Below, in pieces: positions 11,846-48,912 of a stretch of DNA of 64,000 nucleotides. The translations under genes were made by a program, and so were the position numbers. Where the stretch lies: positions 149,086 to 213,085 of the forward strand of contig NW_013657618.1 in assembly GCF_000142905.1 (NCBI RefSeq), given 5' to 3'. The notes beneath the pieces were generated by a model. The model saw only the letters and a list, made by a program, of their open reading frames with translations. It was not told the origin of the DNA and searched no databases. The first letter of the stretch is position 1. Every line of letters starts with the position of its first letter. Source of the stretch: Thecamonas trahens ATCC 50062 (lineage: Eukaryota > Protista > Apusomonadida).

Positions 11846-13168
11846 CTACTCGTCGTCGTCGTCGTCGCCGCCGCCGCGGTTGCGCATGATCATGGAGGCG
11901 ACAAAGGCCGTGCCGGAGATGGCAAAGAGCGAGTGGTAGCCGGTGTGAAGTGCGCGGACAAACCAGCCGCGGAACCAGGTGGTGAGGCCTTCCTGGGCCA
12001 TGCGGGCGCGCATGACGGTCATGACGCTTTCGGACGACGAGGTGGCGCCCTGGATGACCGGGAGCAGGCGGTCGACAGGCATGGTGACCGAGACGGAGAG
12101 GACGCCGCCGAGGAATGTGATCATGCCGGACTCGGCATGGGTGAAGGGAGTGCCGTCCTCCTTGGCGAAGAACTTCTTGAGATAGAGGATGAGGGCAAAG
12201 CGCGAGCCCCAGTCGAGGGTCCGCTTGGCGACGCAGGCGGCCATGCCGGGCATGATGGCGCCGCGGATGAAGCCCTTGGCACGGACGTCCTCGTTCATGA
12301 CGCGGAACGAGAACTTGATCTCCTCCATTGGGCCCATGGGCGGGCGCGAGACGAGGGCCTTGTTGACCCGGGTCCGGGCGAGGAGGAGCGGCGAGATGAA
12401 GACACCCTGGGTGGCACCGGCGAGCGCGCCGGCCACCAGCTCGCCCTGATCCTTGGAGAGGAACGAGACATTGTCAAAGACGTTGTTGTAGAAGGTCTTG
12501 GCAAAGAGCAGGACGGCGCCCTTGGTGACACCGAGGACAACGCCCCAGGGAAGGAGGCCGGCCTCAAAGCCGATGATCTTGTCGGCGATGTTGCCCTTGA
12601 GCAGCTGGCGGACGAGGACCGGGTACGGGTTGGACGTCCGCTGCTTCTCCATCTTGAGGTTCTCGAGGAACAGGCCACCGGTGACCATCTCGGCTGCGTG
12701 AGCGGGTTAATGGGTGATCATGATGGCGGACGATGATGGTCATCCCGATGGCGTGCGGGGCGATGATCGACAGAGAACGTTGGTCGTCGAACAATTACCA
12801 CCATCCGCAGCGGGTGAGGCCGTGGCGGGGCATCCATGGGCGTAGCGGGAGAAAGGGGCCAGGGAATGGGATGAAAATAACATTAGCATGGAGATGAGTA
12901 AGTGATCATGACTAGTACCAAATATGGAAGCAAGTGGGCAGGTATTGCGTGTAGGGGAGGGCAAGAGGTGCAACGGCAAGGTGTGTGGTGGGCGGCAGGG
13001 TGGCTGCGGTTGGTGGCCGACGGACAGCAACGTACCGATGACCATTCCAGCGCCAATGGTGGCATTGAGCAGTGGCGAAGCACCGGCGACAGCAGCGGCA
13101 TGAGCGACCGGACGGCGGTACGAATCAGAGCCCTGACTCGGAGCAGCAGTGCCCGCAAGGTTAGACAT
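11846..13168 (-). CDS. Mitochondrial carrier family protein (Yhm2-like citrate/oxoglutarate carrier); intron 13035-12694; start may be upstream at 13216
   Basis: Carrier signatures PLLLARTRV and PVDRLLPVIQ. GTACGT donor and CAG acceptor (phase 1) join to give LLNATIGAGMVIAEMVTGGLFLENLK, resembling Yhm2 helix 1. Confidence 0.85.
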
Positions 13169-13659
13169 GGTCTGAGGAGGGCCCACACGCATCATCTCTT
13201 GCACAGTGCTCAGCATGATGCCTAAGGAGCGAGGCAGTGACGTGGACCGCTCTGAGTCTCTCTCTCCTCCTCCTCGCCGTTCGCCGCAAGGAGCATCGCT
13301 TGGCGCCATCAATATTAATGGTACCGCCATCGATTAATCTCAGTCGTCCTCGAACCAAATTTTTTGGTTTTCGCCGTCGTAGGTTGTCTTGGGCGGACAT
13401 TCTCTGCCCGAGACCGGGCGTAGGGATGTGGAAGCCGGAATACAAGGGATCGATGGATGGGAGGCAGAAGAGAGGCAGTGCGAGAATGATTAGGTGTCTG
13501 GAACCATGAAGAGGGGGAGGATATGGTGTGTGGCGGGCGTAGAAGGACGGCGAGGGTCTGGCTCTGCACGAGCACGTGGTCTTGCCGGCAGCCTTGCGGG
13601 CGCTGCTCAGCACATCAGAATCTGGGCTGAGATTGTTGCCAGTTGCGGACGATAGTCAA

Positions 13660-13965
13660 TTGTGATCACGACAACGATCACGATTATGGTCACCATCACG
13701 ATTATGACCACGATCACGATTGTGGTCACCATCACGATTACGACAACGATCACGATTGTGGTCACCATCACGATTATGACCACGATCTCGATTATGACCA
13801 CGATCACGATTATGACCGCGATCACGATTATGACCGCGATTATGACCACGATTGTCCTCGATTATGATCACGATTGTGGTCACGACAACGACCACGTTTG
13901 TAGTCACAATCACGATTACCACCGATTGCGACCACGATCACGATCACGATTACGACCACGATCAC
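13660..13965. repeat. Degenerate hexamer array (CACGAT/CACGAC/TATGAC) with about 54-bp higher-order repeats
   Basis: Read directly; lies between the divergent carrier and ATG12 genes. Confidence 0.9.
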
Positions 13966-14214
13966 CTACCCCTCGCCCCCACCACGCCAGACGACCTCCG
14001 TCCGTCCCGTGAGCTGTACCCCCCCCCTCCCCCCCCCTCCCCCCCCCTCCCCACCACCAACCACGATGACGACCACCTGACTCCCCCCCCTCCTTGTGTC
14101 CCCCCCGTACCCCCCTGCCCCCCTGCACCCCACACATTGTACCGTGTGCGTGTGCTTGACTGTGTGTGCTTGACTGTGTGTGGCTGTGCGTGTGTGTGTG
14201 TGTGTGTGTGGGGC

Positions 14215-15080
14215 ATGGCTTCCACAGGTCCTGCCGAAGGCATTGTGCCCCAGACACGGAGCATCACAGGTACGGACAAAGGAGAAGGGGGGAGGGGGGT
14301 AGGGAAGGGGGGGGGGGGGACTCACGGAGATGAGGATGTGTGGGACATGGATCAAACTGGACGGGCACTCTCTCGGTGGGACATGGATCAAACTGGACGG
14401 GCACTCTTTCGGTGGGACATGGATCAAACTGGACGGGCACTCTTTCGGTGGGACATGGATCAAACTGGACGGGCACTCTTTCGGTGGGACATGGATCAAA
14501 CTGGACGGGCACTCTTTCGGTGGGACATGGATCAAACTGGACGGGCACTCTTTCGGTGGGACATGGATCAAACTGGACGGACACTCTCTCGGTGGGACAT
14601 GGATCAAACTGGACGGGCACTCTTTCGGTGGGACATGGATCAAACTGGACGGGCACTCTTTCGGTGGGACATGGATCAAACTGGACGGGCACTCTCTCGG
14701 TGGGACATGGATCAAACTGGACGGGCACTCTCTCGGTGGGACATGGATCAAACTGGACGGGCACTCTCTCGGTGGGACATATCTCGGTGGAACATGGATT
14801 GGGGCGGATCTCAGACGACAAGGTGGTGATCAAGCTCAAGGCTGTCGGCTCAGCAAAGCTTCTCAAGCGCGACAAGTTCAAGGTCTCGGCGAGCAATGCA
14901 TTCTCACACGTCGTCGCCTTTCTCCGCAAGCAGCTGCATCTCGCGCCGGCCGACGCTCTGTTTGTATACGTTGACAAGTTTGCGCCGCCGCCTGATGCCA
15001 ACGTCGGCAAGCTGTTCCTCGCCTACGGTGACGTCAAGTACCTCGTCATCCACTACTGCAACAACCCCGCGTTTGGCTGA
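14215..15080 (+). CDS. ATG12: Ubiquitin-like autophagy protein ATG12; exons 14215-14269 and 14815-15080
   Basis: KVVIKLKAVG.A..LK..KFKV...FLRKQL...LFVYV..FAPPPD..VG.L...L.IHYC..PAFG with terminal Gly; GTACGG..CAG phase-1 intron. Confidence 0.95.
14341..14780 (+). repeat. Intronic 36-bp tandem repeat, 12 near-perfect copies (TGGGACATGGATCAAACTGGACGGGCACTCTYTCGG)
   Basis: 36-nt period read directly; no spacers. Confidence 0.98.
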
Positions 15081-47772: not shown

Positions 47773-48912
47773 ATGTTTATGGCACACTTTGGCATGGGCT
47801 TTGTACGGACGGGGGGGTTGGGCAGGGAGGGAGTGAGGGAGCGAGGGAGGGGAGGAGGGGAGGGGAGGGGAGGGGAAGGGGAAGGGGAAGGGGAAGGGGG
47901 ACTGACTGGTTTGGTGTTGTGGACATGGGCGTGGGCATGGACATGGGTATGGGTATGTTCTTGATGTGTGCGATGGTGTTTGTCGTCGTGGTGCTGGTCG
48001 TCGTCGTGGTGCTGGTTGTCGTTGTGGTGCTGGTCGTCGACGTGGTGCTGGTCGTCGTCGTGGTGCTGGTCGTCGTCGTGGTGCTGGTCGTCGTCGTGGT
48101 GCTGGTCGTCGTCGTGGTGCTGGTCGTCGTCGTGGTGCTGGTCGTCGTCGTGGTGCTGGTCGTCGTCGACACCTCCGCTTGATCTCGGGGTGCTTTCTCG
48201 CTCTCTACAGCTGGCCAAAGTGATGCATCAGAAGCTGAGTCTCGGTCAGTGCATGGCTGTAGCCATCGCCCCGGACATGCTGTTCTATCTTGCGGTGATG
48301 GCTACGTCACGGGAGTCGCTGGTATACAACGGGTCGCTAGCCGGCAAGTCGCTGCCTTTCACCTACACGTTTCCGGTCTCGCACTCGCTGGGCGTCATGA
48401 TGGCACTGGCGCTGACGCTGGCGGTGCTCGCCAAGCGGTACAGCGCCCGTGATTTGACAGTCGCACTCGGCCTCGCACTCTCGCACTTTATCCTCGACGG
48501 GCTCTCGCATCGCGACCCGCTACCGCTGGTGCCGTGGGCGCACTCGCCCGGACTCGACGTGCTTGGCTGGGGGCTGGTGGACAAGCGCCTACCGCTGTTC
48601 TTTGGCGAGCTCACGCTGTTCTTTGCCGGCTACATGGCGTACGACTCGATCACCCATGTACACCACTCGTCGGTCCGGTCGCTCGCCTTGCACAAGCCGA
48701 GCGGCTATCCCCCGCTGCACTACCTCATCGCCGCGGTTCTTTTCATCCACTGTTTCCTCATGTCTGGCCCTGTGAGCGAGCATGTCGATCCACGCCTCTA
48801 CACCTTTGTCCTCGGCCTCCTCACCATTCTCCCCATTTTCCTCGCTACTCTCGTCGACCAAGGGCGCGTCTCTGATATCGTGCTCTCCGAGGCCGACCAC
48901 AAGATCAGATGA
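47773..48912 (+). CDS. Bacterial-type membrane-bound metal-dependent hydrolase-like protein (YdjM-like motifs); intron 47803-48210
   Basis: Spliced MFMAHFGMGFLAK; APD, SHSL and SHFILD motifs; multiple TM segments; GTACGG..CAG phase-0 intron. Confidence 0.75.
47983..48170 (+). repeat. Intronic 18-bp tandem repeat (GTGGTGCTGGTCGTCGTC), about 10 copies
   Basis: Read directly. Confidence 0.95.

What the first reader, a model, noticed from the sequence alone, without database searches (positions are those of the whole stretch)
14270..14814. ATG12 intron: branch-like motif about 490 nt from the acceptor, bridged by an AG-free 36-bp tandem array
The only ACTCAC in this intron is at 14320-14325. After two adjacent GAGs there is no AG until the frame-restoring CAG at 14812-14814, because the 36-bp unit (12 copies) has no AG on the sense strand. 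This is the signature of a distal branch point with a long AG-exclusion zone and scanning to the first YAG. Such branch points are rare, often regulated exceptions in mammals. Here the distance seems to come from minisatellite expansion, so it may vary freely with copy number.
Basis: partly seen in the sequence, partly recalled or inferred. Interest (0 to 1): 0.8.

Follow-up and report, generated by a model that had tools for sequence, protein, structure and literature searches.

The report
Distant branch site in ATG12 intron
The autophagy gene ATG12 of the protist Thecamonas trahens has a 545-base intron whose only good branch signal lies about 490 bases before the intron's end, across a 12-copy repeat with no competing splice signal, which would be one of the longest such distances known if RNA data confirm it.

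Summary
The window is Thecamonas trahens. The deposited 106-aa ATG12 protein equals exon 1 (14215-14269) plus exon 2 (14815-15080), so the annotation uses intron 14270-14814. The 36-bp x 12.2 array (14340-14780) is real. ACTCAC (14320-14325) is the only yUnAy match in the intron. After GAGs at +5 and +10 there is no AG until CAG 14812-14814.

In a 264-kb sample of this genome, non-coding ACTCAC is followed by a first YAG that lands on a coding start in 31% of cases, against 6% for any position. AGs are depleted from the motif to the acceptor. GAG/AAG at +11 to +14 are bypassed. Four introns have ACTCAC as their sole branch candidate 60-101 nt from the acceptor. A marine relative has the same intron, same phase, with its branch motif 14 nt from the acceptor.

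Caveats: an AG-free array is not rare by chance (16-28%), no RNA or lariat data exist here, and 490 nt is five times the next clean case in my sample. A rival reading, a 65-nt intron with an in-frame coding array, is disfavoured.

The scan had already noted similar AG-free distal-branch introns elsewhere in this genome. I did not test those.

The parts
14215..14269 (+). ATG12 exon 1: ATG, 18 codons (MASTGPAEGIVPQTRSIT) and the first base of a split Asp codon
   Evidence: Its translation equals the N-terminus of deposited protein P0001. Codon score is near zero. The end of the exon weakly resembles the relative's exon 1.
14270..14275 (+). 5' splice site CAG|GTACGG
   Evidence: It is a GTAYG-type donor. 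A preference for C at intron position 4 in T. trahens is reported in bioRxiv 10.1101/2022.06.08.495308.
14276..14319 (+). Purine-rich 5' segment of the intron, holding six AGs including one TAG
   Evidence: AGs occur at normal or high frequency upstream of the motif.
14320..14325 (+). ACTCAC, the candidate branch site (branch A at 14324), 54 nt after the donor and 490 nt before the acceptor G
   Evidence: It is the only yUnAy match in the intron. ACTCAC is the motif most enriched before acceptors in this genome. The 54-nt distance from the donor falls in the 54-64 nt cluster of compact introns.
14327..14334 (+). Two GAGs, at +5 and +10 from the branch A, presumed to be bypassed
   Evidence: Elsewhere, GAG at +11 and +14 and AAG at +12 are bypassed, with an in-frame stop behind each.
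14340..14780 (+). 36-bp minisatellite, 12.2 copies, 98% identical; AG-free on the sense strand, with 41 AGs on the other strand
   Evidence: It was found only at this locus in the genome. Codon score is negative in all three frames.
14781..14811 (+). Unique AG-free tail of the intron, with no yUnAy and no pyrimidine tract
14812..14814 (+). 3' splice site CAG, the first YAG after ACTCAC
   Evidence: The relative's intron has the same position and phase.
14815..15080 (+). ATG12 exon 2: the ubiquitin-like domain ending in Gly, then TGA
   Evidence: Pfam APG12 PF04110, E 1.6e-25. It is 100% identical to P0001. Codon score is +0.57 per codon.

Best explanation
Intron 14270-14814 of Thecamonas trahens ATG12 is a distant-branch-point intron. 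U2 snRNP recognises ACUCAC at 14320-14325, 54 nt after the GUACGG donor. The first step therefore makes a lariat with a very small loop and a tail of about 490 nt. In the second step the two GAGs at +5 and +10 are passed over, being too close and having a disfavoured -3 purine. The next AG on the RNA, CAG 14812-14814, is used. The distance arose because a 36-bp unit with no AG on the sense strand expanded to 12 copies inside the spacer between branch and acceptor of what was otherwise a standard compact intron. Shown: the sequence facts, the exon model, the genome-wide link between ACTCAC and the first downstream YAG, and the conserved intron position. Inferred: the branch nucleotide, the bypass of the GAGs in this intron, the way the acceptor is found, and the origin by expansion.
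For: 1. The deposited protein P0001 uses exactly this intron.
2. ACTCAC is the sole yUnAy in 545 nt, and its place 54 nt from the donor matches the compact-intron module.
3. Leaving this intron out, 17 of 55 non-coding ACTCAC in 264 kb have their first YAG within -20 to +10 nt of a coding-segment start, against 5.9% for any position.
4. From motif to acceptor, purine-AGs are 3.5 times rarer than in the 50 nt upstream (16 per 1081 against 68 per 1323, p 5e-7, ATG12 excluded).
5. GAG at +11, GAG at +14 and AAG at +12 are followed by in-frame stops, so they are bypassed.
6. Four introns have ACTCAC as their only yUnAy 60-101 nt from the acceptor with an AG-free zone. One is in a NEDD8-like gene whose acceptor is fixed by the TLTGK motif.
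7. A marine relative has the intron at the same codon and phase.
8. The motifs present in the array (ACTGGAC, ATCAAAC, TCAAA) show no enrichment before acceptors.
Against: There is no transcript or lariat evidence. At 490 nt the distance is about five times the longest clean case in my sample (101 nt). An AG-free array is expected by chance in 16-28% of cases. The array has no exceptional fold to shorten the distance (z -0.18), and there is no pyrimidine tract after the motif. My intron set rests on a home-made codon-score method applied to only 264 kb. Part of its statistics is conditioned on the first-YAG rule.
Confidence: 0.68

Rival explanations
1. The intron is the same, but the branch is proximal and non-consensus. 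One candidate is the A at 14750 of GAUCAAAC in the last full repeat copy, 64 nt from the acceptor. Another is an A in the tail (14794 or 14798). ACTCAC would then be a bystander and the AG-free array a coincidence.
For: A distance of 64 nt lies inside the range seen in this genome. AG-free arrays are common by chance. A few T. trahens introns lack CTCAY and must use weaker sites such as TTGAC or GTCAT.
Against: There is no yUnAy anywhere in the last 490 nt. Outside this intron, ATCAAAC (0 of 8), TCAAA (1 of 43) and ACTGGAC (0 of 6) show no association with acceptors. By my hand alignment, AUCAA would form about one Watson-Crick pair and one wobble pair with the canonical U2 GUAGUA, against four for ACUCAC. 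A chance ACTCAC at the typical 54 nt from the donor has an expectation of about 1-2%.
Confidence: 0.17
2. The real intron is only 65 nt (14270-14334), with ACTCAC as a normal proximal branch and GAG 14332-14334 as acceptor. The array would then encode 12 copies of GHGSNWTGTLSV as an N-terminal extension of ATG12, possibly as a minor isoform.
For: A 65-nt intron has the same phase as the 545-nt one, and the ATG12 frame is open from 14334 to the stop at 15078-15080 (ORF listed from 14340). N-termini of ATG12 proteins vary in length, and the relative has a coding EGV repeat in exon 1.
Against: All three forward frames are open across the array, so openness carries no information. The codon score in that frame is -0.15 per codon (-26 over 160 codons), against +0.57 in exon 2. 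I found no purine-AG acceptor, and GAG at +11 and +14 are bypassed elsewhere. The relative's exon 2 starts at the same codon as 14815. The deposited model is the long intron.
Confidence: 0.04
3. The branch is at ACTCAC, but the acceptor is found through folding of the repeat RNA rather than by linear search. Folding would bring the two sites together, as in the distant-branch introns of budding yeasts.
For: Any 500-nt G+C-rich RNA folds compactly; the MFE here is -153 kcal/mol. In yeasts, long branch-to-acceptor spacers depend on structure (PMC3239191).
Against: The fold is no better than shuffles (z -0.18; 36 of 100 shuffles fold at least as well). The predicted pairs do not join the motif to the acceptor. 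Yeast structures mask internal AGs, whereas here there are none to mask.
Confidence: 0.06

Closest known systems
Human exons with distant branch points and AG exclusion zones (Gooding et al. 2006, PMC1431707; scanning model of Smith et al. 1989, as cited there)
   Same: A long AG-free stretch ends at the acceptor. The branch sequence sits at its 5' edge and AGs are at normal frequency upstream. AGs very close to the branch are bypassed.
   Different: No pyrimidine tract follows the branch motif. The branch motif is strict, as in yeast. The zone is filled by one minisatellite. The host is an intron-poor apusomonad. There is no evidence of regulation or alternative splicing.
Distant-branch introns of Saccharomycotina (COF1 and UBC13 in S. 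cerevisiae; distances up to 166, 471 and 185 nt in Saccharomyces, C. glabrata and K. lactis; PMC3239191)
   Same: A strict branch motif, an intron-poor genome with introns near gene 5' ends, and a distance of the same order as the C. glabrata maximum.
   Different: The yeast cases need a stable stem that shortens the distance and hides internal AGs. Here there are no internal AGs and no fold better than shuffles.
Orthologous ATG12 intron of an uncultured marine relative (metagenome contigs L025-L029)
   Same: Same codon, same phase 1, a GTACG donor and a CAG acceptor, with exon 2 starting D-S/D-K-V-V.
   Different: It is 212-218 nt long, and its only yUnAy (ACTGAC) lies 14 nt from the acceptor. 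The low-complexity, length-variable part lies upstream of the branch and contains TAGs.

Membership tests
Distant-branch-point / AG-exclusion-zone intron | An AG-free zone before the acceptor far longer than typical for the genome | tested here: met
   There is no AG for 478 nt (14335-14812), or 490 nt from the branch A to the acceptor G. The median distance from motif to acceptor in the sample is 35 nt.
Distant-branch-point / AG-exclusion-zone intron | A branch-site consensus at the 5' edge of the zone, with AGs at normal frequency upstream of it | tested here: met
   ACTCAC is the only yUnAy in the intron, and six AGs lie in the 50 nt before it.
Distant-branch-point / AG-exclusion-zone intron | A pyrimidine tract next to the distant branch site | tested here: not met
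   The sequence after the motif is GGAGATGAGGATGTGTGGG. Other introns in the sample also lack a tract.
Distant-branch-point / AG-exclusion-zone intron | The branch nucleotide mapped on RNA (lariat) | not testable with these tools
   No transcript or lariat data could be reached.
Yeast-type structured distant-branch intron | A stable helix between branch and acceptor that shortens the effective distance | tested here: not met
   MFE -153.2 kcal/mol against a shuffle mean of -152.2, z -0.18.
ATG12 ubiquitin-like protein (Pfam PF04110) | A full-length APG12 domain ending in a C-terminal glycine | tested here: met
   E 1.6e-25, profile positions 1-87 of 87; the protein ends ...NPAFG before the stop.
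Coding tandem repeat (N-terminal extension of ATG12) | Codon usage of the host genome in the frame joined to the domain | tested here: not met
   -0.15 per codon in the ATG12 frame and similar in the other frames, against +0.57 in exon 2.

The most novel reading that the evidence does not exclude
The Thecamonas trahens spliceosome may fix the branch on a strict ACUCAC and then take the first YAG at almost any distance, with no pyrimidine tract and no bridging structure. Minisatellites could then expand freely between branch and acceptor provided they carry no YAG on the sense strand. The organism would be a natural test bed for how the second step of splicing finds its acceptor. ATG12 and the other AG-free zones of 130-600 nt noted by the scan would be instances of this.
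Probability: 0.4. Interest if true: 0.65.

Novelty: new variant of a known kind. Interest (0 to 1): 0.5.

Why it matters
How the spliceosome finds the 3' splice site after branching is still debated: linear search, diffusion, or help from RNA structure. It has been studied almost only in yeast and mammals. An organism that combines a yeast-like strict branch motif with mammal-like AG exclusion zones of hundreds of bases would separate these models. It has neither a pyrimidine tract nor a bridging structure. It would also show a simple rule for which repeats can grow inside introns. For genome annotation, the rule 'first YAG after ACTCAC, purine-AGs skipped' is a practical aid for gene models in apusomonads.

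Tried and rejected
1. More genome sampling. I did not try to get more letters by other tools, so all genome statistics rest on 264 kb.

2. Intron discovery by joining strongly coding open segments. This gave only 4 high-confidence internal introns, because most introns lie near gene 5' ends behind tiny first exons. I switched to a motif-anchored test with controls.

3. Genome-wide count of GTACGG-N20-50-ACTCAC. There were 61 matches against 181 for the backward pattern. This is not informative, because the control has a different dinucleotide content.

4. U2 snRNA search (RF00004) in the own genome. There was no hit, and the tool's controls did not ring either, so the result is uninformative. 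The branch-binding sequence of U2 remains unchecked.

5. Purine-AG acceptors. The three apparent cases turned out to be ATG starts or a 5'-UTR intron.

6. Synteny of the relative's downstream gene with the fatty-acid hydroxylase gene next to ATG12. There is no similarity, so orthology rests on 66% protein identity and the shared intron position.

7. CTGAC as a branch motif in T. trahens. Its first YAG met a coding start in only 1 of 91 non-coding cases. This weakens the second 'distal-branch' case at 47803-48210.

8. The joined step. I searched the spliced model exon by exon, by reference. I did not build or search the joined protein. I checked the match to P0001 by prefix and suffix only.

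Full report
**What is there**

The window is from Thecamonas trahens ATCC 50062. The 87 codons at 14817-15077 are 100% identical to a deposited 106-aa protein, P0001 (NCBI name 'hyosophorin', UniRef 'ubiquitin-like protein ATG12'). They carry a full Pfam APG12 domain (E 1.6e-25).

P0001 begins with the translation of 14215-14268 and ends with that of 14817-15077. One Asp lies between them, made from G14269 plus A14815-C14816. The deposited model therefore removes 14270-14814, which is 545 nt, CAG|GTACGG ... TCTCAG|AC, phase 1.

I searched the model exon by exon, by reference. I left out the joined step and checked the match by prefix and suffix only.

**Check of the observation**

- TRF reports a 36-bp unit, 12.2 copies, 98% matches, at 14340-14780. 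The array was found only at this locus in the genome.
- The intron has six AGs in the 50 nt before ACTCAC (14320-14325). It then has GAG at +5 and GAG at +10 from the branch A, and no AG until CAG 14812-14814.
- ACTCAC is the only match to yUnAy in the whole intron.

So the facts hold. Their weight needs care, for two reasons:

- 16% of 36-mers of this genome are AG-free as a circular unit, and 47% are YAG-free.
- About 10 of the 36 strands of the 18 long arrays in my sample are AG-free.

The 'signature' is therefore not the AG-free array as such. It is the combination of three things: a strong motif at a typical distance from the donor, AGs up to that motif, and none after it.

**A rival that had to be examined**

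All three forward frames are open across the array. An intron of only 65 nt (14270-14334, ending at the second GAG) has the same phase as the long one. ATG12 would then carry 12 copies of GHGSNWTGTLSV at its N-terminus. Four results speak against this:

- The codon score in that frame is -0.15 per codon, no better than the other frames, against +0.57 in exon 2.
- I found no purine-AG acceptor in the sample.
- Elsewhere, GAG at +11, GAG at +14 and AAG at +12 from a branch motif are followed by in-frame stops, so they must be bypassed.
- The ortholog described below starts exon 2 at the same codon.

**The splice code of this genome**

Only 264 kb could be sampled: the window plus C1:100001-300000. 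I trained a codon log-odds model on long open frames. For each non-coding occurrence of a motif I then asked whether the first YAG at least 8 nt after the putative branch A falls within -20 to +10 nt of the start of a coding segment on the same strand.

| Motif or position | Cases meeting a coding start | Share |
|---|---|---|
| ACTCAC (ATG12 intron left out) | 17 of 55 | 31% |
| ACTCAT | 7 of 23 | 30% |
| CTCAC, any context | 44 of 201 | 22% |
| Any position | - | 5.9% |
| CCATCA (non-overlapping control) | 4 of 70 | 5.7% |
| CTGAC | 1 of 91 | 1.1% |
| ACTGGAC (present in the array) | 0 of 6 | - |
| ATCAAAC (present in the array) | 0 of 8 | - |
| TCAAA (present in the array) | 1 of 43 | 2.3% |

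In the 28 introns anchored in this way, the median distance from branch A to acceptor is 35 nt. In the 50 nt upstream of the motif, purine-AGs number 68 per 1323 positions. From the motif to the acceptor they number 16 per 1081 (p 5e-7, ATG12 excluded). YAGs are absent from that zone by construction, so this test uses purine-AGs only.

**Long distances elsewhere**

Four introns have ACTCAC as their only yUnAy 60-101 nt before the acceptor:

- window 1087: 60 nt
- L008:2054 (+): 63 nt
- L010:8549 (-): 63 nt
- a NEDD8-like gene at L020:5250 (-): 101 nt

The last three zones are fully AG-free. The window 1087 zone holds only two GAGs, 3 and 5 nt before the CAG. In the NEDD8-like gene the acceptor is fixed by the conserved TLTGK start of exon 2. 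In three of the four (not L008:2054, which has one upstream AG) the upstream 70 nt hold 7-9 AGs, mostly in GGGAGGG runs, while two of those zones (window 1087 and the NEDD8-like gene) read GGGTGGG-type sequence.

Apparent distances of 149 and 201 nt dissolve, because closer CTCAC or TTAAC motifs exist there. ATG12 at 490 nt is thus about five times the longest clean case in my sample.

The donor-to-branch distance of 54 nt lies in a cluster of 54-64 nt (7 of 22 introns). The 5' half of the ATG12 intron therefore looks like that of a standard compact intron.

**Comparative evidence**

The only other hit, P0002 (66% identity), comes from five marine metagenome contigs. Its called start is a GTG inside exon 2. 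Reading the DNA gives this structure:

- Exon 1 encodes MADPQSSEGV(EGV)n...GILATDRVVK.
- The donor is AGG|GTACGA, and the intron is 212-218 nt.
- The acceptor is CTGCAG|AC, followed by SKVVVKLKAVG.

The intron lies at the same codon and in the same phase as in T. trahens. Its only yUnAy is ACTGAC, 14 nt from the acceptor. Its low-complexity CA-rich part lies upstream of that motif, varies in length between contigs and contains three TAGs.

This fixes the acceptor at 14814. It also shows the contrast. In the relative, the variable filler sits before the branch and is free to hold YAGs. In T. trahens it sits after the only motif and holds none.

The downstream genes are unrelated, so orthology rests on the protein and the intron position.

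**Mechanism**

The best reading is that U2 pairs with ACUCAC 54 nt after the donor. The lariat then has a loop of about 55 nt and a tail of 490 nt, the GAGs at +5 and +10 are skipped, and the first YAG is used.

The array does not fold better than shuffles (z -0.18). This resembles the mammalian AG-exclusion-zone class (PMC1431707) more than the structure-dependent yeast class. In the yeast class, distances reach 166, 471 and 185 nt in Saccharomyces, C. glabrata and K. lactis (PMC3239191). Unlike the mammalian cases, no pyrimidine tract follows the branch motif.

The main rival is a weak proximal branch (AUCAA, A14750, 64 nt from the acceptor). I give it about 0.17, because nothing in the array resembles the motifs that mark acceptors in this genome. 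I give the main reading 0.68.

**Novelty and score**

Distant branch points and AG exclusion zones are known. Published work on T. trahens that I could find mentions only the C at donor position 4 and a high share of non-canonical introns. The new points would be:

- a branch-to-acceptor distance at the top of the known range;
- a distance created by a minisatellite;
- an organism with a strict branch motif, no pyrimidine tract and no bridging structure.

First-stage notes of this scan list similar AG-free zones of 130-600 nt elsewhere in the genome. I could not fetch or test them. They are leads, not support.

Without RNA evidence the case stays inferential. My interest score is 0.5.

Noticed in passing
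L029:292-406 and L025:1-116: In the marine relative, ATG12 exon 1 holds an in-frame 9-bp repeat (GAGGGAGTG, coding EGV). The copy number seems to differ between metagenome contigs. Its intron also differs by indels in CA-rich low-complexity DNA, while the last 40 nt or so (ACTGAC...CAG) are invariant.
   Followed up: partly
window 47803-48210: This is the second 'distal-branch' intron noted by the scan. It has 14 AGs in the 70 nt before ACTGAC (47901), then none for 305 nt across an 18-bp GTC/GTG array. However, CTGAC is not associated with acceptors in my sample (1 of 91). A TTGAT with a pyrimidine-rich tail lies 27 nt before the acceptor, so a proximal branch is a serious alternative there.
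   Followed up: partly
L020:5145-5446 (-), which is G000:C1:255145-255446: A NEDD8-like gene has a 302-nt intron after a 6-codon first exon. ACTCAC is its only yUnAy, 101 nt before the acceptor. There are nine AGs in the 70 nt before the motif and none after it, apart from a CAG at +3.
   Followed up: partly
window 13659-13965 and 14019-14210: Just upstream of ATG12 lie an 18/36/72-bp tandem array (GACCACGATCACGATTAT), C-rich runs and (TG)n. The exon-1 frame stays open back to 13852 and has an earlier in-frame ATG about 350 nt upstream of the annotated start.
   Followed up: no
window 12690-13035 (-): The gene with its ATG at 12688 (-) appears to have a 5'-UTR intron. It has an AG-free zone of about 200 nt and TTAAC/GCTCAC motifs 5-13 nt before a CAG that lies 5 nt upstream of the start codon.
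   Followed up: partly
window 14340-14780, both strands: Five of the six reading frames are open across the whole array. ORF lists therefore suggest several spurious proteins of 210-330 aa here.
   Followed up: yes
C1:100001-300000 (L005-L024): The 200 kb sampled holds 300 N. The runs seen lie next to G- or C-homopolymer tracts inside candidate introns. Some intron lengths in this assembly are therefore uncertain.
   Followed up: no
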